Shown in pieces: positions 3,501 to 33,500 of a DNA stretch of 64,000 nucleotides. Below the pieces are notes generated by a model. The model ran no database searches and was not told where the DNA came from. It saw nothing but the letters and a program-made list of their open reading frames with translations. This DNA comes from Bispira polyomma (Eukaryota). Where the stretch lies: NCBI GenBank assembly GCA_965649765.1, contig OZ287748.1, forward strand, positions 11,656,001 through 11,720,000, in the 5' to 3' direction. Made by a program: the position numbers and the translations under genes. How positions within the stretch are numbered: the stretch's first letter is position 1; each line of letters starts with the position of its first letter.

Positions 3501-6500
3501 ATACACTAAACAACAAGACACCTGAGAACTCTATTCCTTACCTTAGTCTTTCCCGATCCAGTTGGTCCTACCAACATGAGACCATGTCTGACGACTGTGG
3601 TTTCATACAGCTGGATACACTTGTGTATAAAGCCTTCCACATCCTTGAGTCCTTTTTTCAGAGCAGTCTTCCTGAGTGACGTATCCAGGGACCCATAGTC
3701 TATCGCTTCCTCCTTAATGTTCGGGAACAAGTCCGATACAATACCAGTAAACAGCTTCAGATCGTCCATCAAGAACTTGGGCACATTCACGTCTCTGATC
3801 GCTCTCAAGGCAATCAACTCCTCATCCATATCTGGGTTCTGACGCTTCAAGTTTCCAGCAGCAGAAATCACAGACTTTACAGCACGCATACCAAAGTCAT
3901 AATGGTCCTGTAAGACAACATATTAAGCAGCTGGGATGCTATTCAAAAAACATTTTATTTAGTTTTTTTTTTTTGAGTGGCTGGTCAAACCTATGTAAAG
4001 CTAAAAATAGACAATTTTTAAGAATGGCAGAATTTTAAGAATGCTAAGTGCACATGGATAATGTGCATGTGAGTGTTACAATAGCATTATATTATTAAAA
4101 GCCGGATTTCCCCCAAAAATTTTGGACAGGTTTCATTTTTGTTCATTTGGCTAAGATAACAGTAACTGAAGTACACATGAGCAAAAAAACTGTAAACAGG
4201 AAATAGACTTTCACAAGAGGTTTCTATGATGTGGAAATGGTGAAACAACAAAGATTTCAAGGTTTACATGGAATTTTGTACAATAATTCTGCTTAATTAT
4301 ATCTATTTTTTGGTCAACTGGTTCTTGCTTTTGATGTCCGATTTTGAAGACTTTTTTGCTCTAGAATCCAAAGTGAACGTTATAATCTAGTTTGCTGTCT
4401 TCTGCTCTGTGAAATCTCCAAGTTTATTGAATATATAAAACTGCCATCTTAATGGTACAAATGTATTTCCAAGGAGGTCACATTCTTTTAATAATTCGGC
4501 ACAAGAGGTCCTCAGTGGCTTTTGTGAAATTTAAACAAACACAAACATAAAAGCATAAGTTCATGGTATATAATTTGTGCATAAGAAGACACTTACCTGT
4601 GAGCTGAGCTGTTCTGACGACAGTTTGAAAGTGGTGACAATTTTCTTGGCCAAAACTCTAGCATCAGAAAAACCAAATGAGAAGAGTGAAATCTCAGCAA
4701 TCAGAGCATAGTCAGGTACCATCATAGCCACTGGGCGGAACAAGGCCTGTAAAACATTGAGATCTTAGCAATCAAAGCATAGTTAGGTACCATCATAGCC
4801 ACTTGGCGAACAATACCTGTAAAACATTGAGATCTTAGTAATCAGAGCCTAGTTAGGTATCATCATAGCTATTTTCTATAACCATTGGTCAGAATAATGA
4901 ATGACCTAAAGGACCAAAAGCTGCCACTGGTACTGAGTAGTTAGTCATATCATTATTGAATGTAAAACTTTACTTAAAGAAAAATTATATAAGCTGGACC
5001 AAACCTGAGATTGCCAATATACATGTATGACATTAACTGGAAGAATATTTCACTAATTTACAATTTTTTAGAAACTCATTGGACTTTTTTACTATTGGGC
5101 AACTTTTAGGTAATTAACATAAATTAAAATTTCACTGGCAATTAATTTTCTCTATCCAGGGTCATCATTACTAAAAATAGCTTGTAATAAATAGTTCTAA
5201 ATAAATTTAAATTTCACTGGAAATAATTTTCACTATCCAGGGTCATCATTACTAAAAATAGCTAAACTAAATTCCTGGTGAACATTTCTACTGATAGAGT
5301 AAGCTTTAATTGATGCTGAGTACACTAAGAGGTCAGAGTGAACTGCACATTATTACACACAGTCTCCTGAATATATCAGGTGTTTTACCCAACCCATTAC
5401 AGACATGCATTACCTTCAGGTTATCAGGTAACTCGGTCCTACCAGCATAGCCAGGGTTCATCGTAATAAAGACAGCACAGGAAGCTTTCAGTTCTAACTC
5501 CACCCCCTCAAACATGAACCTCTCCAGCTGTACAAACAAGATATAGGTCAAGGTTACTAAGTGAATGTATATTACTATGGTATATATGTTATTTTAAATT
5601 TATGTATACAGCTTTAAAATACATTTGTAAATTTTAGATACCCAAAAATTAATAACATAAACAAAATTATAGACTTAAAGCTTTAGGCTTAAGAGACATG
5701 TATACGTTACAGTCAATATGTGTAATCAGGGAATACACCTCCATGACTAAAATACATCTTCATTGTAACATACCTGTTATATATGACTGATGTATTCAAT
5801 AAATAATTACAGATTTTCTACACTAAAATAGTATATGCTCCAGTATTATTTTATAAATAGATTCAAAATAATGAGTACAATATTTGTATATGCCTATATA
5901 TAGTTCTATATAAATATAGAGGAAAAATAGATGGGCTAAAATATGAAAGCTTGGTCATCTTTGAACTATGAACAAATTAAGGTTCTCTGTATATTATACT
6001 ATAGTGACAAAACCTATACTTGGCATTTTAAATGATACTGCGATAGTTTTAATACAAACAGGTACACATATACACATTATTTACAGTTCTGTATACTATC
6101 TGCAACACATGAAGGTGTAATATTATTTCACACTTAAAGTTAGTTTATTTATGTACAAAGTGATTACAATGTGCATCTTTGAAAAGCAAACTACACTACA
6201 GGTGCTATTAAGTGCATGAACACTATATGTATGTGATTAAACCCTACAACCAACAGAGAAATAGGAGTTCTTAATGCTATTACAGTAGACTCTGTATAAG
6301 TAGAACAGTGTAAGTCAAATTTAGATATATATTAAGTGGAATCAGTTTTGAGGACCCAACATCAGAAAATGCTGTGTGGAAGTTTGCTACAACTGGAACC
6401 AAATACTGTCAATATTGAAAGTTTTAGTTATATAGAGTCTACTGTATAAACTTTAGACATTGAATACACAAAAATTGTAGTTTTTACTGCCACAAAGGGT

Positions 6501-9500
6501 TAAAGAATGCTTTGAACTAAGCTAGCTATGTCTACAACATACACTGATATATTGTCGAGGATATATACTTTACTTCATTTATAATATATTTGAGGCACTA
6601 TATTAACTTAATTATTATCATCCTTACACAAAAACAATTATATCATTATCATTTCAGTATTTCTCAGCCAGCGGGGGATTTTGACAAGAAACTTTTTGCA
6701 AAACAAAACTATATAAAACATATATAATAGGCAAAAAACCCAAAACCAAAAGTCAACAGCATTCCAACATGAAACAACAAATGATTAAGTGCAAGAGAGA
6801 ATCCAGTGATAATACTGGACTCCTTATTGTATATAGTACCCCTTCTTTCTGAGCTGCATGCATTGTCATGATCTGTTGAGCCACCACTGATAACACCTCA
6901 ATGTCAATACGGTTAAACTCATCAAAACAGGCCCACGAGCCAGAACTGCGGAAGGGGGTAATACAAAGGGGAATAATATATATATATATATATATGTATA
7001 TAGGCTGAAATATGGTTCTCAAGAACAAACAGGCCAAAAAAATGTATGGCTTAAAAAGAATCTGCGAAATCCAATATGACATGTCGGATTACGAGATTAT
7101 CTTAACCCTTTAGGGTGCATTACGAGCGAGTGTATTGGTCATGTAGTATTGATAGAAAACAGGTACAACCCGAGTATGTCTTGGGAGTATTTACAACTGT
7201 TTTATAGCATTTAATTATGCATTTTTTTACGAAGTGACTTGAGATATGTTCCAATATCGTCAGGTTGAGGCACATTCATTAATAAAACTGTTAATTCACG
7301 GCTCGAGCATGGGCGATTGTTATAAACTCGCTATAAACTCTTCCTTATTGTTGTGGGATTTAAACATATGGTTTCTTATTGCAGAAAAGATTTAATCTGA
7401 AATTGCCCCCATAATTGTCTGGCTGAGCCCAATATGTAGTATTAATATAGGATGAAGTAAAGAAGAGAATGTTTGCGTTTTACTAATTAAATATAGAATT
7501 CTCCTGAAGCCCTGTGTATGTTTTATCACTTCATTCCTTCCGTTGGGGAAAAACACCTACAAGTAAACTATAAAAGATTGTAAAGTCGATATAAATACCT
7601 TGTTTACATTGTTTAGTGTGTAATGTGTATATATATCCTGCCGGGATTTTGATAAAGTCATTTTTGTAGTTTCTAGTCTAGTTTCTAATCAGTCCTAGTC
7701 TGAAATGTGTTCCGAGTTTACAATGCTTTGGACACGTTGTACGTGCTCCAAGCTTTGCTTTTTTTTTATTGATTCTACATGATATATATGTGTACATTAT
7801 GTCTTGTTGAGTCCTTTCTCAGTCATTTCTACCTCATTGGCCGTTGACATACACGTTATTTTCACTCAAAGCTGCTATGTCGGCAATTACTGCACACATA
7901 ATTTTTATTTATTTCCAGTTTGTGGCCAAAGGGTTTGGATTATATGAATAATAGACTGGTGCTTTAAAAATCACAATAACAGTCATTACACATAGCAGAA
8001 GAAATCAGTGTTACGGCAATTGATTGAATTTAGGAGTTTTACTTTTCTGAAGATGAAATCATTTCGTAAAATTAGGAAAGTAAAGATAAAATTACCTCAT
8101 AAATTAGGAAAAGCAAGATGGTAACACAAGAAAGTGTACCTGTTAGATAGAATTATTATGCAATATTAGTCATCTAAATAGCACTATTATATATATATAA
8201 TATTGGTATTAATCAAATAACAATAAGAAAATTGTTTGACATAGAGATATAGAAATGGTGATTTATCCCATATCTATCACATATACAGAATCTACACACA
8301 TCAAGAAGCATATAGGAGAAATAACTAAATATAAGTTAATAAGTCTTTTGGACAAGAAAGCTGTAAGGATATGATAGAAATATTAAAATCAAGGTCTACA
8401 AATGATTGTATTAGAAAGTTACAAGTTTAAGTCAGCATCAACCTTTCCCAAGTCTTACTTAAATTAAGAACAGTTTTATAGTCTATAATCTACCTGTACT
8501 GTATTGATGTGTCAAGCTCTATGCACTATGGCACAGATATAATACAATGTGTGATAATTTATCAATATATTAACCTCTGTACCTAGTATGCAAAACCTGA
8601 AAAATGGTTGATACTGAGGAAAAATAAATAATCATAATGAAAGACGATTATTAATAGATCATTCTTGGCTTTGGGAATGCCAACCAAATCATATATATAG
8701 TAAATAGGAATGGATCATGTATAGAACATGTGTGTCTGGCTGTTTGTTGTAATACACGCTTCTTTTAAATACAGTACTTCATTTAGATATAGAAAAACAC
8801 TCGAGTCAAAACTATTAAAAACAATAAAAAAAAAATAAGCCAGGAAATGTAAAGATTGTTGTCCATCAAATCAGCTTTTGTGTGCCAGACACACCAATTC
8901 CACAAGAAAGATATTGTTCTTCAACTCAGAACACTATAGTTAAATCTCCTGCCCATGTATCACATGATACAAAATAGAGCGACAGAACAAGCATATGCTT
9001 CTAAATGGTGTGGCCATCAAATTTTTTGTGTGGATGTTGAAAATTTGGTTTATTTTTGTTCTAGGTTTAGAGTGTCTGGCGTTGCATCAAAACGATACAG
9101 GAAGTTGCACATAAGCTATAATTGTAGACAGGAAGTACATCACCTCAAAAATTTGAGAAACTTTTTACGATGCAAAAATTAATTAAATTAGCCAATAATA
9201 ATTTTTTTTATAATATGGATATAGTGAAATTACAAAAATTTTAAGGTCCGAACAAAATACTGTATACAATAATTCTGCTTAATTATAATTTTTTTTGAGT
9301 CAACCATTTCTTGTTTCTGATTTCTGACAGACCGCTTTAGAATCTAAAACGAAGAAAATATTGGTATTCGGTTTGCAATCTTCACTACTATTTTAAGATG
9401 ACATGAAACTAGAATATATATAAATGTATATCGACCATGTAGGAGATTATGGCAGTATAGTGAACTGAAGAACTGGTAGCTGGGTAGTATTATTATTAGT

Positions 9501-12500
9501 AAGAGGTAGTGATGGGTCACAGATGGAGAGTTTTGGAGACAAGGTCAGTGATGAGTCGTACCCTCTGCGCCTGTGCTTTCTGTATGGTAGTGATCTGCTG
9601 GGCAACCACGGACAACACCTCAATGTCAATACGATTGAACTCGTCAAAACAAGCCCAAGCCCCAGCACTGGAAACAGTAGCAAGTCATCATAAAGTGAGA
9701 CTAAAACTAATACATGTACAAACTCATATATTCAAGCCCCAGCACTGGAAACAGTAGCAAGTCATCACTGGGTCAGACTAAAACTCTTACATCTACAAAC
9801 TCATCTAATCAAGCCCCAGCACTGGATACAGTAGCAAGTCATCACTGGGTCAGACTGACAGTTTTACATCTAGAAACTCATCTTATCTCTGGTCTGCCAT
9901 ACTGGCAAAAAACCCATATTTTCTAAACAAAATTTACCATCTCTAAATTCCTTAAAAAAGCTATACAATATAAATTAAAGCTTTAATTTGTATGTTATAT
10001 CCTGAGAAATTATGACCAGGTGTCTTGTTTTTTTATAGAAATAATCTTCACAGACTTTTATATGCATGTAAGAATAAAACGTTCCCTCCACTACTAACCT
10101 TGCCAAACCTTTGAAAAATTTCCCCATAGCCATGAAGTCCAGCTGGTCAGAACAGTTGAAGACCACACACTGAATAGCCATGGCTTTGGCCAGATCCTGT
10201 AAGACAACATAGGAATTTAAAGTAAGAAACAAGTAGAGTATCGGCACCTCAAACACAGTCTAGATGGTTTGTTGAATTACCTACATTTTTGGTATAGAGC
10301 TTCATATATGATAACATCATATATTGTAGTCAATCATAACCACACTATATAGTATTTAGGCTAGGCTCATCTCGAAGTGAAGACAAAGGTTGGTAACTTC
10401 ACATATATTATATACAGTACAGTAACTATAAATATCTACAGTGTCTTGATATTTTTAGCTAAGATACATGTATATCCATATTCATGGTCAATATCATTCG
10501 TATTCTGTGTAAATCCTTACACCGTTTTATTTGTGTCAAAATTATACGGATCCGCGATACGGATCCGATGTGTGAATGGACCTTAACTCAATTTTTTCAC
10601 AGACAATTCAGCTTATATATTTGACACAGTATTTGTTGTTTACAGGGAGCAATTCCACTTTACCGGTACAAGGCAACTCATATGTTTTTACCACTTTGCC
10701 TTAAGACAGCCTATATTTGCCCCAGTATTTGTTCTAGTTTCTTGTATACAGTTTGTCAGACATTTCCATACCTTGGTGGTCTCCGTCTTCCCAGTACCAG
10801 CGGGCCCAGCAGGAGCTCCCCCAAACTTGAGATGAAGGGCCCCGGTGAGAGTGAGGTAACACCTGTCTGTGAGTGGGGTAATGACAAGACGACCCGTGTT
10901 ACCCAGGTACTCAAACCCATAGGGAAACTCCGCATTGACTGCACGGATAAACAGGGAGTCATCGTGCCAGTAGTATCTGATAACAGGTCACAAACACAAG
11001 GCTAAACGACCTTTTAAGTGAACTAAGTGAAATGGGTGTCTATATATTGTAAGGAAATTGATAACTCGGCACATTTATACACCACTACCCATTGGTATTC
11101 ATTTGGCACAATTACACTAAAACTATGATCGGCAAATTATACAGGGACATAACAAAAAATGCATCACCACTGATGAAGTGTCTTCAAAATGAAACCAAAT
11201 TTTTACATTTTTGCATTAGTAAAAGACAATTACAGAAATTAAGACTACATAAGCCTGATAAGTTTCCAGAATATCCTGCAAACACAATTTATTCTCAGTT
11301 AAACATTAATATTCGAGACGTCTATGTGTAAATCTACAAAAAAACGGTAATCTTTCCCAGAATAATGAAACAGAAGAGTCATAACTACCTGAGTTGACTG
11401 ATCCATTCAAAGTCATTGACATTGTTGACATTCTCTTCAATCATCTTGGTGACCACATCTCTGGCATGTACTTCTATCACAATCAAGGCGGACAACACCT
11501 GTCTTCCGATCTTACTCAATGGTTGCCTTACCAAGTTCCTTAAATCATCCAGCTGAAATAAGATCACATAATATTGCCGTAAACGTATGTGGGGACCATG
11601 TTAAGACTCTGTGGCAATTATCTGTTGCATTAAACTGTTACACACAAAATCTAACGCTTACAGATGTTTAATAGGAACTCGAATGAAGATAAATGCTGAG
11701 CTGGTCCTAACGGATAAATAAAAATTCAGATTCAATTATATTATATGATTATGTCCCAATTTTTTTGGCCAGTCTAATGGTGAAAGAAATCGGAACAGAG
11801 CAGTTGGTCAAGGTTTTCTGCTCTGCAATCCATATGCCTTCACCAAGTCTACTGCCAACTTTAAACACATAAACGCCAGTGCTGAGATTCAAACCTACAA
11901 CTGAAGCAGTTGGAGGAGAGTGTGTTACCACTACACCACAGGCCCCTCTCTAGACAAAATATGCAAGACTTAGTGTGTTCAGGGGGTTGCGAACATTGTG
12001 AGCCACTTTTTTTGTAACTGATTGACAGCTTGGGCTCCGGAAATGATTAATCTGACGTTATTTCATTCACTTCATATTAACAACACTTTACACACTTCAT
12101 ACTAAGAAATATTGACATTTTTGTAAAAAATACTTTGACTTATGCTACTTTTCGACTTCTGTTACTAACACAACACCTTAGAAGTGTAACCCTTAAAAGT
12201 GTAACCTTTGAGGTCAGACTGACACATTATGTCATAGTTCTAACAACAGCTGTATACCTTACCTGTGCGACGAGTTTGGGGAAGTAACCTTTGAGGTCAG
12301 CCTGCTCCAGGGCGGCGGCTACCTCAATAGTCCAGTACGTCTGACAGCCAGCAATGACCAGCTGTCCAGGCCACTTCAACACCCAGTCTGATCGGGCAGT
12401 CTGTAGTCACAACATCAGACAAAGTGTAGAAACTAGACTATTGTACAATATTGCACAATGTCACCAAATAAAGGCATCACAGGTTTTGGACTACAGCTAT

Positions 12501-15500
12501 TACTACTACCCTCTATTGTAGAAGATGGTGAACTGCATATAAACACACCATTTGTTTTCGATATCAAGGTTTATCAGAAATCAAAAGCAAAATTATTGTC
12601 CTTGAAATCTTTGTAATTTAACAATATCCACATCTGTTCATAACAAAATTATTAATAACTATTTTAATAATTTTGCATTATTATTGTCTTTAAAATCCTT
12701 GAAATTTAACAATATCCACATCATAACAAAATTATTAATAACTAGAATCTATTTTAAAAAATTTTGCATTGAAAAATTGTCAAACTTTTACGAAAATCCA
12801 TTTCCGGCATCAGCAAAAGCTGAAAAATATAAAAAACCTCATTTTGTCCAGAAGTTTCATTTGGAATCGGGTGTTAAATTGTAAAATTTGATAACAACAC
12901 TAGTAACTGCGAGTCGGCTGCGAGTCGGCTGCGAGTCGGAGTGTGAAAACTGCATCGATTATCACCCACTTAGACTTAATGCATCAATGGATGTATTAGA
13001 AAACCAATCACAACCAAATAAAGTGCTGATACATACCTAAACTCTACTGTTTTTTTGTCTTTTTCCAAAATATATAACTTAAAATTTCAGTGTAAAATGA
13101 ACATAAAGTTAGATAGGCCATTAATCGCTTTACTAGTACCCACCACTTTATAGTCAGCCAGGGCCTCTTCCATGATGAGCCTCAAGCTCTCCTTCATGAC
13201 TTTCTCCACCTCCAGCAGCCAGTCCTCTACATTACCTCGTGGGTAGAGCACATTCTTGAAGGGAACCTCCTCCCCTTCACCAGAGTACATGGTTGTAATC
13301 TGCAGGTCATCCTCAAACTTCAACTACAACATACATTACAAGTAAAGGTGTGAGTCTAAACAAGCCTCAAAGGGAACCTCCTCCCCTTCACCAGAGTACA
13401 TGGTGGTAATTTGCAGGTCATCCTCAAACTTCAACTACAACATACATAGCAATTAGAGAGGGGAGTATTAACAAGTCTCAAAGGGAACCTCCTCCCCTTA
13501 AAGGGATCCCCTTCAACAGAAAATATAGAGGTAGTCTGCAGGGGTGGCTAGATTTAGGACAATGTCTAGATTTAGGGCAAGGTCTCGTATTCTCTAACAA
13601 AATTAGCAAGTCTTAGGCTCTTTTTAATATAGCACAAATGTATACCAGATTTTGGCTTATGACTTAGCTGAGTCCATTAGTGAAGGTCTAAGTTATTGTG
13701 GATTACCTTAGCAATGTCCTTAAAGTACTTCCTAAGATGTGGCTGTACTGCTGTGGCGGTGTTTGGTCTATGATTAGCACTATACAGTAAGTTAGTGTGG
13801 ATTACCTTAGCAATGTTCTCAAAGCACTTCCTAAGATGTGGCTGTACTGCCGTGGGGTCTTTGGTCTATGAATAGCACTATACAGTAAGTTATTGTGAGT
13901 TACCTTAGCAATGTTCTCAAAGCACTTCCTGAGATGTGGTTGTACTGCTGTGGGGTCTATGAATAGCACTATACTGTAAGTTATTGTGGATTACCTTAGC
14001 AATGTTCTCAAAGCACTTCCTAAGATGTGGCTGTACTGCCGTGGGGTCTTTGGTCTGGGAGAGGATCTCCAGCAGCTCATCATCAGACAGGAAGTAGAAC
14101 CTGGGGAAGGCCTGGCGCTTGGTCTCCAGGTACTCACTCAGACCCTTCTGCACCTGGTCTAGGAGCTTGTTACACTCACGCAGGTTGTCCAACAAACGGT
14201 TGTCTGGACACAGTGAGATGACCTGCAAAACAACACACAACATATATACCCAAAGTGACCCAAACAATTGTGTCCACTAACACTTGTGTCCATATTCCAG
14301 AATTCAGTACTTTCCCACTCCCAACTTTGTTGTGGGTGTTATAACATGTTAACGATACAGAGTGCAGCTAGACATCATCACAGTCTCTTTTTGACGTGGA
14401 AAAAGTAAAGAGTATACATGTACAGTAGAACCTCTATTATCCGACCATCTATTATCCGACTATTCAATTTTACGGACTCAATTTCATTCTCCCAAACTTT
14501 TTTTTGGCTATTGTTTTATACTAAAATGCCCCTTCTATTTTATGGACCTTCTATTATCCAAACAAATTCTCACTCTCCCAATATGGTCGGATAATAGAGG
14601 TTCTACTGTACTATGATTTTAGATGCACATGGTGTCTCCCTATAAAGGCATTGCCAAGAAGTCAGACAAATCATGATAAACTCAACAAGTTCCATACTTG
14701 TGCAAGTCTAGTGTACAGTATGTGTATCACCAGTTTATTGTTAATTAAACATAAATAGCCATCATAAACTAGACTTATAAGAACCTATTAAATGTTTATA
14801 TAAAGTTGTTTAAGGTTGAGTTTTGTCAGTTTTACAGCTCACCCAGAGCCTCTCTGTCTGTGTGTGTCTCAGTTGTTGGTTACGGTTTTGTTTGTCCGTG
14901 TTTACAGCACACCAGGGCCCATATTCACTAATAGACTTGGCCAAGTCTTGGGCTTAAATATTGTCCAAAAGTATACTAGATTTAAGCCTGAGACTTGGCT
15001 AAGTCTGTTAGTGAATACGGCCCAGAGCCTCTCTGTCTGTGTGTGCATATCAGTTTGTCAGGGTTTGTTAGTACTGACCTGTGGGTTCTCCTTGGCACTC
15101 TTCATGATCTTCCTCCACAGCCTCTCCATGGTCTGGTACCTCTTGCTCTCCACTGGCAGCTGTCTGTTGATGTCCTCACTGCTGAAGATAGGCTCCAGGT
15201 ACAGCCACTGTCTCTGGCACAGCAGCCACTCGTCCAGTACATCCTGAAAACAGCCACACAGGATGTGTAGTGACCGACTGACCATTTCACTCATCAGTGA
15301 CAATGTAAGATGCAGTGACCAAATGACCATTTCACTCTTCAGTGACAATGTAAGATGCAGTGACCAACTGACCATTTCACTCATCAGCGACAATGTAAGA
15401 TGCAGTGACCAACTGACCATTTCACTCTTCCGTGACAATGTAAGATGCAGTGACCAAATGACCATTTCACTCTTCAGTGACAATGTAAGATGCAGTGACC

Positions 15501-27500: not shown

Positions 27501-30500
27501 AACCTTCTGCTGTCCACCTAATTAATACAAGACACTCACTAACCACAGAGCCACAGTATACCCAGCCTGCTGCTGTCCACCTAATTAATACAAGACACTC
27601 ACTAACCACAGAGCCACAGTATACTCAACCTGCTGCTGTCCACCTAATTAATACAGGACACTCACTGACCACAGAGGTACAGTATACCCAACCTGCTGCT
27701 GTCCACCTAATTAATACAAGACACTCACTGACCACAGAGCCACAGTGTACTCAACCTGCTACTGTCCACCTAAGTAATACAGCACTCACTGACCACAGAG
27801 CGACAGTATACCCAGCCTGCTACTGTCCACCTAAGTAATACAACACTCACTGACCACAGAGCGACAGTATACCCAGCCTGCTACTGTCCACTTAAGTAAT
27901 ACAAGACACTCACTGACCACACTGACCACAGAGACACAGCCCCTACAGTATACTCAGGACATAACAATACAAATACCACACCGGCACAAACTGACATCTG
28001 TGTGACGATCTTGTGAGGCCAGCCTACTGCTTTGCACCTAATTACAATAACTCAAAGTCATATTCTAACAAGATGACCATTCTTATGTTAGGCATATACA
28101 ATTATTTAAAAGCATAAAATATGCACCCCGAGCAGTTTTAGGGGATCATTGCAATGGTGATTTAATGTAAACAAATTCAAAACGGCCAATTATACATAGC
28201 TATTTTTGTATTTTGTAAAAGTTTACTAATTTCAGTATCTTTGGAAGGTAAGGCTCTACAAAATAACTTATAATAATAGTAAAATAGCATAAATTTATCA
28301 GGCTTTACAGCTGTCCAGCAGCATCCCCCCATGAATCATTATCAGCCCTCGGGCCTGACAGACTGATTGATGTTGGGGCTACTGAAAAGCCATAATACTC
28401 TACCAAATCATGTTATTGTCCTAATGCCACTCACTTGGCATTGAAGTCGTCTGTGGAGAGGTTGTAGTAGAACTCTTCGATGAGTTCGTAGTCCTGCATG
28501 GCGTGGTCTATCAGCTCCTGGTGCTCCTTGATCGTCTCAGGGATGGACTTCATCCACTCGCGCATGTCAGACAGCTCTTCTATACAGTTAGCCTTCTCAT
28601 ACAGTTTCCTGGCAATGGCCTTAAACTCTTCACAAGCCTCATCTGCCTGGGTCCTCAGTTTCTTGGCCAGAAGCTCCAACACAGCATTTCCTGCACAAAG
28701 AAAAGAAGTCAACACTAACTATTAACATACATCTTTAAGTCATAAAATAGAAGAGGCATTTGATTTAAAAACAACAGGGAAAGATATATTTGGGAGAATG
28801 GAAATGTGACTATAAAATGGAATATTTGAGTACCATGGAATATTTGAGTACTAGAAGTTTTGATAAAAGAAGTTCTACTGGTGTTTTTAACCATATATGA
28901 ACTTCCTCAGCCTCACGGTTTCTGACAACTTGCCCCGGAAAAACTAGCGGGTGAAAACAATAGGCTATGGAGTAAAAATAGAATATTTGTAACTAGAGTT
29001 TGTGGGAGTAATACTTGAGAGTATACAGTAGAATCTCTATTATCCAAACATGTTGGGAGAGAAAAATATTGTTCAGATAGGAGAATGTTCGTAAAATAGA
29101 ATACATTTTTGTATGAAACAACAGAAAAACATAAATTTGGGAGATTAGAAATGAATTCATCAAATTGAATATTTGGATTTCAGAAGGTCGGATAATAGAG
29201 GTTCTGGTGTATTACCGAGTGCCTTCCTCTTCTTAGACAGGCCCTGTCTCACAGTCTCTGTGTTGACGTAGAAGGGTCCGATGGTGATATTACTGGGCAG
29301 CAGCCCCTCAATCACCTCCTTGGCATGTAGGTGCATCTCCACCTCCTGCTTCACCTCCAGGGCTGACTTGTTCTGACTCTCAAAGTCCCTGCAATATAGA
29401 TATACAATGTAGTAGTACTCGGCTGCTAAACAAACATCTTAGATGTCAGTCTGTTATCGACAATACAACGAAAGTGTACTAGATCACAGTACATATAGAT
29501 TACAGTACATAAACACTGCTGACAAAAAATGTCATACGTCAACCAGTCGAGAAAGTAGAACTACACAGTACAGCTAGATCACAGTATTTAACATTATTCG
29601 TGACCGTGTACAAGATCAAAATTAATCCAAATGATGTGTATACCCTTTACCATGCTATTTTAATGATAATACAATATTGTATAAATAGACAAGGGCTGGA
29701 AGAAACATTAGGTTATGCAACACCTAATGTAATGATCGTAACATCTCTTATTTAATTAGTTTTTGCACATTTTTAGTAGAATTTTACTCTGAACATATAT
29801 TACTAAACTCGAAACACACTCCACCTACTGTCGACTGGTACATACTTCTAGGGGCAGGCCCCCCAAAAAATAGATCAAATCAATCATGTTTCCTTAAATT
29901 ATAAAATCAACAATATGGACATTTAGAATTGCAATCAATTCCTGCTCTAGCTATAACATAGGAAAGAGTTGCTCACTTGACATAGGCATTGATGTCCATA
30001 TTCATGAGCTCCAGGTATTTCTCATACTGCCTGGCGTAGGCTTTAATGGGGATGAGAGACTTTGTGATGGCGCGTCGGATGGTCTCCCTCAACTCTACCA
30101 CATGGGGCTCATTCTCCCCAACAGACTCCAGTAGTGGTGTACCTGACCAGAAGATGTCCTCCATGATGTACTGGAAAAGAGAGATATATAGTGTACTGTT
30201 AGATATATAGAGTTATAATGTACCTGACCAGAACATGTCATACATGATGTACTGAAAGAGAGGGATATAGTGTACTGAAGGATAGAGATATAATGAACCT
30301 GACCAGAAGATGTCATATATAATGTACTGAAAGAGAGGGATATAGTGTACTGAAGGATNNNNNNNNNNNNNNNNNNNNNNNNNNNNNNNNNNNNNNNNNN
30401 NNNNNNNNNNNNNNNNNNNNNNNNNNNNNNNNNNNNNNNNNNNNNNNNNNNNNNNNNNNNNNNNNNNNNNNNNNNNNNNNNNNNNNNNNNNNNNNNNNNN

Positions 30501-33500
30501 NNNNNNNNNNNNNNNNNNNNNNNNNNNNNNNNNNNNNNNNNNNNNNNNNNNNNNNNNNTGACTGTAGATATATGTTGTAGTGCAATGTATAAACAATTTG
30601 GGGATATAATAGTTTTGTGTGTGTGGTTTTATATTATGTTTTGTAGAAATCCCTCAGCTTTTCCAGCTGGGGTACATTTTGTGTAGAACAAATGCCTTTA
30701 TCAAACAAACGGCACAGACTTTAACTGTAGAGACTTTAACAAATCCCTCACCTTTTCCAGCTGGGGTACGTTTTGTGTTGAACCTATGCCTTTATCAAAC
30801 AGGCCAATCAGAGTCTGTTCAAAGCCAGGCAGAGAGGTGCTGTAGTGTACACCTTGTGTGTCCATCAGCAGGTCCACATAGAACAGGGCATTCTTCTTAG
30901 GTCTGAAACAAGGGATTTAACAATTAACATTACAAGCAAATAGCCTTGGTGTGACGTATATCGAGGACGTAAGCAAGTGCACAGTAACTGACTAAAATTA
31001 GGTTATACCAGCTTTTCATTGGGTAATATGTAGGATAAACTACATTTTAAAATATTCAACAACTAATCGGAGCTGATGTAAATGATAAATGGCAACTAGT
31101 CAACTTCAATTTTTTTGGCAGTCGTGACGTCCCTAGTTAGGAATGTTATCAACATACTTGTATGGACTTTTAACCAGGTCAGACGTCCACTTCATTTCTT
31201 CCTCGACCTCCAGAGTGGAGTAGCAAGCATCCAGAATCATTTGAGTGAAGTTCACCAGAGAATCCTGGATCAGGTATCTCAAGGAATCCTGTAAATAATA
31301 AGTAAAACTACCTGAGTCATGTACATTATAATTTATGTGACCAAAGGTGATAAACAGTACAAAACAAGCCCAATAGGGCGGATACTGTGTGGTTTATCTT
31401 TTCGAGTCATATCATTTTTAAATATACACATCACTTAAAAGTCACAATTTCTATTATCTGTATAATTTTTAACCCAATTTTAATAACAAACATTCACTCC
31501 CCCAATTTTACATTTTGCTCTTGTTTCATACTAAAATCACACTTTTCTAGTCTATAAACCTTCTATTATCCAAACAGCGTATTGCTCTCGCAACATTTTG
31601 GGATAATACAGATTTTACTGTATTACATGCAATGTACCACTGGGGCCCCTATTTACTAACGGACTTAGCCAGGTCTTAGCAAAAGGCTTACGAATCTATC
31701 ACAAAAGTAAACTGATTTAAGCCTAAGACTTGGTTAAGTCCATTAGTGAATACGGGCCCTGGACACTAATTCTATCCAGACAGCACTGACCTGCATGTTG
31801 AACTTGACCATCTCCATAAACTTCTTCATCTTTGAGATCTGGTAGACTTCCCAGTTGGTCTCATGGATGTTGAACCATCCCTTACCCACATCCCTCAGAC
31901 TGGTCCTAATGGCGGCCCTCAGAGTGGTGATCCAGCTGTCCTTGAGGAACAGAGACACCTGCGCAAAGGGGAAAAGCATGCACTATTATGTGTTACAATT
32001 ACACACTACATGACAGTCAATGGTATGCATACAATTTTATGATGGAAACTTCAGACACTACAGATTATTAATATTATTAAAATTGTAAAAAACAGACATA
32101 GCTAGGCTCAGCTGTAAACTCATAAAGAGGCTTGCTACCACTGAGATTCAATCCTGGGTTGTTATGGATCTTGAGATTAATAGTCCAGTACACTAACAGC
32201 GAAGCTAAAAGGGAAGCCTTGAAAGCCCAAGTGTTTAATGCGCTGATATACACAGATATTATAATATTACAACATTAGTGATCCAGCAATAACTTGCCAA
32301 CTCCAGTTTGGACAGGTAAAGCTTCAGAGTGAGGCAGAGGACAGAATGAATTGATTCAAGGTCAGTAATTTAACATGTACCATTTTACTCCCAAATGGAT
32401 GTAAACAACATTACTCTTGATACCAGTGTTAACTAAAGGCCTGTAGATGACCTAAGTGATATGGGCCCGTATTCACGAAGGGACTTAGCCAAGTCTTAGG
32501 CTTAAATCTAGAACAAAGTATACTGATTTAAGCCTAAGATTGGGCTAAGTCCCTTTGTGAATACGGGCCCAGTACTAAACCTGAATGACCTGGGAAGTAG
32601 CCTGGGATTGTGTGAGTATATAACAGTGTTAACTAAAAGCCTGTAGATAACCTAAGTGATCACTACTAAACCCAACTGACCTGGAAAGTGGCCTGTGATT
32701 GTGTGGTGATATAACAGTGTTAACTAAAAGCCTATAGATGACCTAAAGTATCAGTACTAAACCTGACTGACCTGTGAAGTGGCTTGGGACTGCGTCTGTT
32801 CAAACTCCTCTAGTTTCATGTGTTTGGTAGTAGGGATGTGGAATAGAGACTTAGCTGCCACCTCGTTACACTCAGTCCTCACTCTACCAATGGCCTGGAT
32901 GGCTTCCTCTCTGGTGAGTAGGGAATTAAAGGCAAAGTTGTCATACTGCTCATCAAATGGGTACTCTGGTAATTCCATGATACAGCCTAGAAAAACACAT
33001 ATTAAACATTTATTGGGCTTTGTAACATTGATTCCACTCCCATCGAGCATTTAAAATGTGCATAAAACACTCGTTTCCAATGTTATTCCTACATTAGTCT
33101 GATGCTGTGTATCATTAAAAAAGTTAGATCTACCTAAGTCTACAAAGTAAAGTAACATTTTTTTAATACATTTCAAATTATACAGAGGCTGTACATCTTA
33201 ATTTGTTACTGTAACATAAAACTGCTAAACACTACTTTGGCTACCTTTGTCTGGCACTTCTTGTGATTTAGCTGCTGGTAAAGTGACAAAGGCAAAGGTC
33301 TGTGGATCCTCCTCTACTGTCTTGTCAAAGATAATCCTGTTCATAGATCTACAGAAGTCTATGTTCACTTCCTTCTCCAGCACTTGGATGTAGTCATCAA
33401 GCCTGAAACAGTGACAGGACTGGATGTAAGTCATGGACTCATGGCTAGAGATGCTTGTACAAAGTACACACAGTTAAATACTACATCCAAGCCTGAAACA

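What the first reader, a model, noticed from the sequence alone, without database searches (positions are those of the whole stretch)
6840..9667. Mutually exclusive exon pair swapping the AAA1 Walker B segment of DNAH1
Seen: two exons of identical length (106 nt; 9562-9667 and 6840-6945) with identical phases (2 in, 0 out) and intact AG/GT. Including both or neither shifts the frame. The 22-codon core [22 protein letters not shown] shows 9 synonymous and 0 non-synonymous differences, whereas the flanks differ (SAGA vs SSGS; [10 protein letters not shown] vs [10 protein letters not shown]). Established: AAA1 is dynein's principal ATPase site. Inference: an old duplicate under purifying selection that yields two motor isoforms, possibly for sperm flagella versus epithelial cilia. 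It is unlike the young, decaying junction copies elsewhere in this gene.
Basis: partly seen in the sequence, partly recalled or inferred. Interest (0 to 1): 0.8.

Follow-up and report, generated by a model that had tools for sequence, protein, structure and literature searches.

The report
Either-or exon pair in dynein DNAH1
This animal's DNAH1 gene (a motor that bends cilia and sperm tails) has two old, intact versions of the exon that builds part of its main ATP-burning site; only one fits in an mRNA, other invertebrate species keep the same pair, and no RNA data could be found to show the splicing.

Summary
Two 106-nt minus-strand exons (A 9562-9667, B 6840-6945) have AG/GT sites and the same phase, and both map to Pfam AAA_6 positions 84-117. 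Their 22-codon core differs by 9 synonymous and 0 non-synonymous changes.

The gene is a DNAH1 orthologue: exon A is 34/35 identical to mammalian DNAH1.

New here: the same A-then-B pair lies between the same constitutive exons in three other species (loci L020, L021, L022/L023).
- Introns are unalignable between window and L020, yet exon B is as conserved as the constitutive exons.
- B's variable sites across four species fall 7/6/30 by codon position, and dN/dS is about 0.08.
- A fifth species has a pair, a sixth has three versions, and two have a single exon.

Including both exons, or neither, gives a stop within 7 or 10 codons. Short-read contigs from two samples confirm both exons at single-copy depth.

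No RNA run exists for this organism and no spliced B fragment was found. Mutual exclusivity is therefore inferred and the sperm-versus-cilia idea is untested.

Either-or exons in dynein motor domains are known in general (Kollmar 2016; Pillmann 2011); I found no description of this one. The scan's other note on this stretch (s1-670665) is this same finding; a separate note (s1-680819) reports an either-or exon cluster in this genome's dynein-1 gene.

The parts
10770..10987 (-). Constitutive exon with the AAA1 Walker A loop (GPAGTGKT); the 3' end at 10770 is followed by GT; the 5' boundary was not fixed
   Evidence: Stop-free stretch. Pfam AAA_6 positions 1-50, E 1e-24. 96% protein identity to L020.
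10099..10196 (-). Constitutive upstream exon (98 nt, DLAKAM...GKFFKGLA plus 2 bases of a split Ser codon); its donor serves either alternative exon
   Evidence: donor GT at 10098. 100% protein identity to L020, 94% to L022.
9656..9886 (-). Three head-to-tail 77-nt copies of exon A's acceptor junction. The true acceptor is at 9667/9668. Decoy acceptors at 9744 and 9821 each run into TGA after three codons
   Evidence: the repeat finder family D2, 79-87% identity; frames read.
9562..9667 (-). Exon A, the canonical DNAH1 version of the Walker B exon (106 nt)
   Evidence: 34/35 identical to mammalian DNAH1 chains 8j07_g6, 9fqr_X1 and 9d2f_U. Same protein in L020, L021 and L022 (34/35 to the window's exon A).
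6946..9561 (-). Intron between A and B (2616 nt); no dynein-like coding sequence and no convincing docking/selector pairing
6840..6945 (-). Exon B, the alternative version of the Walker B exon (106 nt, same phase, AG/GT intact)
   Evidence: Pfam AAA_6 positions 84-117. Orthologue in L020 at 94% protein and 88.7% nucleotide identity inside unalignable introns. Codon-position pattern 7/6/30.
5528..6839 (-). Intron between B and the downstream exon (1312 nt)
5414..5527 (-). Constitutive downstream exon (114 nt, LERFMFEG...[11 protein letters not shown]...DNLK) encoding the hairpin and the sensor-I strand; its acceptor serves either alternative exon
   Evidence: Pfam AAA_6 positions 120-156. 97% protein identity to L020.

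Best explanation
Exons A and B are an ancient tandem duplicate of one internal exon of the DNAH1 orthologue, the heavy chain of single-headed inner-arm dynein d. They are used as mutually exclusive alternatives.

Each mRNA joins the upstream exon (ending at 10099) to either A or B, and then to the downstream exon (starting at 5527). This gives two heavy chains that differ only in a 35-residue cassette of the main ATPase module, AAA1.

The cassette has three parts:
- the end of helix alpha2;
- the Walker B strand (WACFDEF), identical in both versions;
- helix alpha3.

What changes is two residues just before the strand (A to S twice) and 8 of the last 10 residues, which form the C-terminal turns of alpha3 and the turn into the following hairpin. 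Version A carries the DNAH1-specific patch that is almost unchanged from this animal to mammals. Version B replaces it with a patch that is kept as protein but evolves faster.

Shown:
- the anatomy of the pair;
- the age of the duplication;
- protein-coding constraint on both copies in several species;
- the frame rule: both exons or neither gives an early stop, so such mRNAs cannot make a motor and would be candidates for nonsense-mediated decay.

Inferred:
- that B is spliced in and translated;
- that the isoforms differ in ATPase kinetics or in a contact made by this patch, in the way alternative exons tune arthropod muscle myosin;
- that usage is cell-type specific.
For: Anatomy:
- establish the exon pair, its slot and the frame rule.
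- Gene identity: exon A is 34/35 identical to DNAH1 in the PDB. The next large exon scores 208 bits against DNAH1, against 160 for Chlamydomonas DHC2 and 142 for DNAH6.

Conservation:
- The same A-then-B pair (106 nt each, AG/GT, same slot) is present in L020, L021 and L022/L023.
- Between the window and L020 only exons align. Exon B aligns at 88.7% over 115 nt, within the 84-90% range of the constitutive exons.

Selection on B:
- Window versus L020: dS 0.54, dN 0.04.
- Variable sites across four species fall 7/6/30 by codon position, p = 3e-6.
- In five species the A/B core is 42-44 of 44 identical at codon positions 1+2 but only 7-17 of 22 at position 3.

Age:
- A-versus-B synonymous sites are saturated (pS 0.45-0.97), against 0.39-0.40 between the window and L020 orthologues.

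Other points:
- More lineages have duplicates of the same exon: L024/L025 has a pair and L029 has three versions.
- DNA contigs of two samples confirm both exons.
- Secondary structure of a natural database fragment places the variable tail at the end of helix alpha3 (mean pLDDT 66).
- Precedent: Kollmar 2016 (PMC5100056) states that some dynein heavy-chain genes have alternative splice forms in the motor domain. Pillmann 2011 (PMC3228551) shows a mutually exclusive exon in Schistosoma cytoplasmic dynein.
Against: - No transcript evidence of any kind. No RNA run of this organism is on record. Among the roughly 250 listed hits that I retrieved, every B-type hit is a genomic reading frame with intron flanks, never a spliced fragment.
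- Two DNAH1 orthologues (L026, L027) have a single exon, so the alternative is dispensable in some lineages.
- The 105-nt tree cannot show that the B exons of the four species share one origin (p-AU 0.48: not rejected, not shown).
- No intronic base-pairing device that would enforce the choice was found.
- The structural placement rests on a medium-confidence fragment model.
Confidence: 0.8

Rival explanations
1. Exon B is a regulated 'poison' exon. It is spliced in together with exon A to create a premature stop and lower DNAH1 output, and it is never translated as part of a motor.
For: Inclusion of both exons gives a stop seven codons into B. No RNA data exclude it.
Against: A poison exon is constrained as RNA, not as protein. 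B shows the opposite pattern. Third codon positions vary freely while positions 1 and 2 are held (7/6/30; core 44/44 against 13/22 in the window). The dynein reading frame is open in all four species, and dN/dS is about 0.08. That pattern only makes sense if B is translated in the dynein frame, which requires A to be skipped.
Confidence: 0.06
2. Exon B is a silent relic: a duplicated exon that is no longer used, or used only at noise level, and has merely not decayed yet.
For: No expression evidence. Some orthologues have no second exon (L026, L027). B's donor (GTACTA) looks somewhat weaker than the consensus (my reading).
Against: Synonymous sites between A and B are saturated and the surrounding introns share nothing. 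A neutral copy of that age would be unrecognisable. Instead B keeps its frame, length, AG/GT and the 22-residue core in four species whose introns no longer align.
Confidence: 0.06
3. The pair is used, but not strictly as either-or in one transcript population. For example, B might be used only in a transcript class with another start or end, or it might be a developmental-stage replacement without co-regulation.
For: Nothing here measures usage. Decoy acceptors sit in front of exon A only, which hints that splicing around A is unusual.
Against: B lies in the same intron-bounded slot as A in every species, with the same phases, and no other dynein coding sequence lies between the flanking exons. 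Any productive mRNA through this slot must therefore take exactly one of the two.
Confidence: 0.06
4. Assembly artefact or collapsed/duplicated haplotype.
For: None beyond the general possibility.
Against: Flanks are unrelated and the copies are only 76% alike. Independent short-read contigs of two samples cover each exon with no differences at single-copy depth. The same layout is found in other species' assemblies.
Confidence: 0.01

Closest known systems
Mutually exclusive exon in the motor domain of Schistosoma mansoni cytoplasmic dynein heavy chain (Pillmann et al. 2011, PMC3228551); general remark in Kollmar 2016 (PMC5100056) that some dynein heavy-chain genes have alternative splice forms in the motor domain
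   Same: A homologous tandem exon pair of identical length with split codons inside a dynein heavy-chain motor domain. It was inferred as mutually exclusive from length, phase and homology, which are the same criteria met here.
   Different: That case is a different dynein class (cytoplasmic dynein-1) and a different exon. Here the exon carries the Walker B strand of the principal ATPase site of an axonemal inner-arm dynein. I found no paper that describes this pair.
Alternative exon clusters of arthropod muscle myosin heavy chain (cited in PMC3228551)
   Same: What it works like: one motor gene with cassettes near the nucleotide site swapped to tune the mechanochemistry for different cell types. 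The catalytic residues are kept and the neighbouring surface is changed.
   Different: It is an unrelated motor family. For myosin the isoforms, their tissue use and their kinetic effects are measured; here none of that is.
Four either-or exons for the microtubule-binding domain of dynein-1 in this same genome (earlier scan note s1-680819, not checked by me)
   Same: Same genome, same protein superfamily and the same kind of device.
   Different: It is another gene and another functional part (microtubule contact, not ATPase site). I did not verify that note.
Splice-junction minisatellites ('mirage' repeats; earlier scan note s1-637097)
   Same: Both are local duplications that include exon sequence and a splice site. 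One such array (3 x 77 nt) sits directly at exon A's acceptor.
   Different: Those repeats are head-to-tail and 79-95% alike. They include intron sequence, cover only about 12 nt of the exon, and run into a stop. Exon B is a whole exon 2.7 kb away, 76% alike, with unrelated flanks and a conserved reading frame.
Docking-site/selector RNA pairing that enforces exclusive choice (Dscam1 and 14-3-3 type; from my own knowledge)
   Same: Tandem homologous exons of which exactly one is included.
   Different: No conserved complementary intron elements were found. With only two exons of 106 nt, the reading frame alone removes the wrong products.

Membership tests
Mutually exclusive (tandem-duplicated, homologous) exon cluster | Neighbouring internal exons in one slot between the same constitutive exons, same strand and order | tested here: met
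   Same order in L020, L021 and L022.
Mutually exclusive (tandem-duplicated, homologous) exon cluster | Same length and same entry and exit phases, with intact AG and GT | tested here: met
   106 nt, phase 2 to 0, AG/GT in all eight exons of four species.
Mutually exclusive (tandem-duplicated, homologous) exon cluster | [quoted passage not shown] | tested here: met
   Both match Pfam AAA_6 positions 84-117. 26/34 residues identical in the tblastn alignment.
Mutually exclusive (tandem-duplicated, homologous) exon cluster | Including both or neither is incompatible with the product | tested here: met
   Stop after 7 codons (both included) or 10 codons (neither included), read exon by exon.
Mutually exclusive (tandem-duplicated, homologous) exon cluster | Each copy is under coding constraint of its own | tested here: met
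   Codon-position pattern 7/6/30 for B and 2/1/25 for A. dN/dS of B about 0.08.
Mutually exclusive (tandem-duplicated, homologous) exon cluster | Transcripts contain exactly one of the exons | not testable with these tools
   No RNA run for the organism. No spliced B fragment among listed protein hits.
DNAH1 / inner-arm dynein d heavy chain orthologue | Best match among all dynein classes is DNAH1, over more than one exon | tested here: met
   Exon A is 34/35 identical to DNAH1 chains. The 126-aa exon scores 208 bits against DNAH1, then 160 against Chlamydomonas DHC2 and 142 against DNAH6.
DNAH1 / inner-arm dynein d heavy chain orthologue | One such gene, distinct from the other heavy-chain genes of the genome | tested here: inconclusive
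   The own-genome search gave 19 hits to this exon on eleven contigs, apparently about 16 separate dynein genes. Only this locus has the DNAH1-type tail and two full copies. The full gene model was not built.
Junction minisatellite / decaying pseudo-exon | Head-to-tail copies that include intron sequence, with high nucleotide identity and a broken frame | tested here: not met
   B is 2722 nt from A, only the exon is similar (76%), the frame is open, and B is conserved across species.
Docking/selector RNA-pairing controlled exon cluster | Conserved intron elements complementary to each other near the variable exons | tested here: inconclusive
   Only AT-rich, low-complexity inverted repeats were found. 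One isolated 16-nt match between the species has unrelated flanks.

The most novel reading that the evidence does not exclude
DNAH1 of many invertebrates carries an ancient cassette system at its catalytic AAA1 site: two versions in at least five species and three in one. A single inner-arm dynein gene would then supply kinetically distinct motors to different ciliated cell types, for example sperm versus epithelial or larval cilia. That would make it the dynein counterpart of the myosin heavy-chain exon clusters. The nearly invariant patch at the end of helix alpha3 ([11 protein letters not shown], shared with mammals) would be a functional contact that the alternative exon deliberately removes.
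Probability: 0.3. Interest if true: 0.8.

Novelty: new member of a known kind. Interest (0 to 1): 0.6.

Why it matters
Axonemal dyneins are thought to be diversified by gene duplication, one gene per arm position. Splicing that changes the catalytic module of one of them would add a second, cheaper layer of diversity.

It also points to a short surface at the end of the helix after Walker B. That surface is almost unchanged from this animal to mammals in version A and is replaced in version B, so it is a place where DNAH1's motor activity may be tuned.

The idea is directly testable in three ways:
- junction counts by tissue;
- isoform-specific deletion of one exon;
- ATPase and gliding assays of the two motor domains.

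It also gives genome annotators a concrete rule. A gene model that includes both exons, or skips both, at this position in an invertebrate DNAH1 is wrong.

Tried and rejected
1. RNA evidence.
- The look-up of sequencing runs returned only three DNA runs of one study and no RNA.
- Read laying could therefore only check the DNA. Its few 'joints' (5472 to 9625, 9651 to 10133) have 26-27-nt sides and do not sit on exon borders. I read them as contigs of paralogous dynein genes, not as a processed copy.

2. Spliced B-type protein fragments.
- The search of protein representatives with exon B and two word-index searches with B-type fragments gave only genomic reading frames with intron flanks for B-type sequences.
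- Full-length annotated dyneins could not be reached, because the word-index search takes only proteins of 0.55-1.75 times the query length.
- The third word-index search was not spent, because the chance of success looked small.

3. Names of the source organisms.
- The listing of cluster members gave no names or accessions, so the breadth is stated in loci, not taxa.

4. One origin versus several.
- The 105-nt tree is unresolved.

5. Intron pairing device.
- Nothing convincing was found.

6. P0061 (1352 aa, six matched stretches) is an unrelated repetitive protein.

7. P0013's locus could not be read because no DNA was served. L030 and L031 start too close to the B-like exon to show whether an A exon precedes it.

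8. Modelling both isoforms.
- I did not build or search a joined (spliced) model. All searches were exon by exon, by reference.
- Modelling both isoforms on a dynein structure was therefore left out. The only fold made was of a natural database fragment (P0228:1-101).

9. Restrictions.
- The N run at 30359-30558 was left alone.
Full report
**Observation**

On the minus strand, exon A (9667..9562) and exon B (6945..6840) are each 106 nt. Each follows a pyrimidine tract plus AG and is followed by GT. Each begins with one base that completes a split Ser codon, then 35 full codons.
- Codons 4-25 give the same 22 residues in both, with 9 synonymous and no non-synonymous differences.
- The first three codons (AGA vs SGS) and the last ten ([10 protein letters not shown] vs [10 protein letters not shown]) differ.
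- Both exons match the same positions (84-117) of Pfam AAA_6, the hydrolytic ATP site of the dynein motor.
- A translated search of the window finds only these two copies.
- 1.2 kb of flank on either side shares nothing beyond the exon itself.

**Gene and slot**

- The upstream exon (10196..10099) ends with two bases of the split codon.
- The downstream exon (5527..5414) starts in phase 0 with LERFMFEG and carries the FITMNP sensor-I strand.
- The exon before that (ending at 10770) has the Walker A loop.
- Exon A is 34/35 identical to mammalian DNAH1 in solved axoneme structures.
- A 126-residue exon further on scores 208 bits against DNAH1, against 160 for Chlamydomonas DHC2 and 142 for DNAH6.

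The gene is therefore the orthologue of DNAH1, the heavy chain of inner-arm dynein d.

In the animal's own genome this exon has 19 hits on eleven contigs, apparently about 16 separate dynein genes. Only this locus has two full copies.

**Frame rule**

Read exon by exon:
- B placed after A runs into a stop after 7 codons.
- The downstream exon placed directly after the upstream exon runs into a stop after 10 codons.

Only exactly one of the two exons gives a motor.

**Not an artefact**

Logan contigs of three DNA runs (two samples, one study) cover 6346-6966 (exon B) and 7008-9685 (exon A) with no differences, at the same single-copy depth as the rest. The only break is a (TA)n run at 6967-7007.

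**Relatives**

A search of 1.8 billion representative proteins with the 35 residues of exon B found a 68-residue genomic reading frame that is 94% identical (P0002). Its contig (L020, a 2.7-Mb contig in an ENA assembly) holds the orthologous locus. It has the same constitutive exons at 96-100% protein identity, an A exon (8222-8326), and a B exon 1.7 kb further on (10031-10135).

At the DNA level only exons align between the window and L020. Exon B aligns at 88.7% over 115 nt, within the 84-90% range of the constitutive exons, while all three introns are unalignable.

| Locus | Source | Layout |
|---|---|---|
| L021 | Logan contig | A then B then the downstream exon |
| L022/L023 | metagenome scaffold and an NCBI assembly, short introns | A then B then the downstream exon |
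| L024/L025 | ENA and JGI metagenome contigs | a pair with a different neighbouring exon structure |
| L029 | ENA contig, tiny introns | three versions; the third is split by an extra intron but still sums to 106 nt |
| L026, L027 | ENA contigs | a single exon |

All eight exons of the four main species are 106 nt with AG and GT. I could not obtain organism names for these loci. Earlier notes of this scan call the window's animal worm-like, which I did not test.

**Selection**

- Between the window and L020, exon B has dS 0.54 and dN 0.04. Exon A has dS 0.58 and dN 0.02.
- Across four species, variable sites by codon position are 7/6/30 for B (p = 3e-6) and 2/1/25 for A.
- Within each of five species, the A/B core is 42-44 of 44 identical at codon positions 1+2 but only 7-17 of 22 at position 3.
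- Synonymous differences between A and B are at or near saturation (pS 0.45-0.97). The duplication is therefore much older than the split of the window species from the L020 species.
- In no species do A and B group together, so recent duplication or gene conversion is not the explanation.
- The short alignment cannot tell whether the B exons of all species descend from one event (p-AU 0.48).

This is the signature of an exon translated in the dynein frame, and that requires A to be skipped. It argues against both a silent relic and a pure poison exon.

**What is swapped**

An AlphaFold model of a natural database fragment that spans this region (P0228:1-101 with 29 related fragments; mean pLDDT 66) gives, in order: strand, helix, the WACFD strand, a 19-residue helix, and a hairpin. 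This is the order expected for beta2, alpha2, beta3 (Walker B), alpha3 and the hairpin before the sensor-I strand of an AAA+ module; that assignment is from established knowledge of the fold.

The Walker B residues are the same in A and B. The differences lie in two residues at the alpha2/beta3 turn and in the last two to three turns of alpha3 plus the turn after it. In version A that tail is almost invariant from this animal to mammals. In version B it varies between species ([40 protein letters not shown]).

My inference is that B removes a conserved DNAH1-specific surface next to the ATP site and so changes kinetics or a contact. Which contact could not be tested here.

**Mechanism of choice**

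I found no conserved complementary intron elements.
- Inverted repeats are AT-rich and of low complexity.
- The one 16-nt match between the species has unrelated flanks.

The frame rule plus nonsense-mediated decay is enough to remove the wrong products. That is an inference.

**Missing evidence**

- No RNA run of this organism is on record.
- Two word-index protein searches with B-type fragments found B-type sequences only as genomic frames.
- Modelling both isoforms on a dynein structure was left out for that reason.
- The sperm-versus-cilia idea is untested. The only lead is second-hand: PMC12000136 cites a sea cucumber study (PMID 36371882, not held) for sex-specific DNAH1 isoforms, exon unknown.

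**Known or new**

Kollmar 2016 (PMC5100056) states that some dynein heavy-chain genes have alternative splice forms in the motor domain. It points to Pillmann 2011 (PMC3228551), whose example is a mutually exclusive exon in Schistosoma cytoplasmic dynein. Searches for axonemal dynein or DNAH1 together with mutually exclusive exons found nothing specific. I therefore file this as a new member of a known kind.

I did not check it.

**Verdict**

- The reading as an old, selectively maintained, mutually exclusive exon pair is well supported by comparative evidence (confidence 0.8).
- It still lacks any transcript evidence.

Noticed in passing
window 9656-9886: Three head-to-tail 77-nt copies of exon A's acceptor junction: 22 nt of intron end, AG, and the first 12 nt of the exon. 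The two decoy acceptors (9744, 9821) are intact and each runs into TGA after three codons. Exon B has no such decoys. Whether the decoys bias the A/B choice is unknown.
   Followed up: partly
window 4667-4874, 13259-13480, 13661-14056: Further head-to-tail arrays (periods about 70, 111 and 91-99 nt, 67-95% identity) at other exon borders of the same gene. They produce repeated partial exon translations.
   Followed up: partly
L029:7813-8395: A DNAH1-like gene with very short introns has three tandem versions of the Walker B exon. The first two are 106 nt each. The third is split by an extra 62-nt intron (34 + 72 nt). One version has F and L in place of W and F around the motif (SGSFACLDEF).
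   Followed up: partly
G000 C1:24434465-24434681 (loci L012/L019): Another dynein heavy-chain gene of the same genome has a truncated second copy of its Walker B exon start about 160 nt upstream of the real exon. It breaks off after about 20 residues, so it looks like a junction copy and not an alternative exon.
   Followed up: no
window 8262-8277 and L020:9584-9599: An exact 16-nt match (ATAGATATGGGATAAA) lies at a similar depth in the A-B intron of both species, in otherwise unalignable sequence. It may be chance or a small conserved element.
   Followed up: partly
window 5634-5800 and 6135-6468: Intron stretches with contig depth in the thousands in all three DNA runs, so they are high-copy repeats. 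An 80%-complementary 35-nt inverted repeat lies at 6272-6306 / 6421-6455.
   Followed up: no
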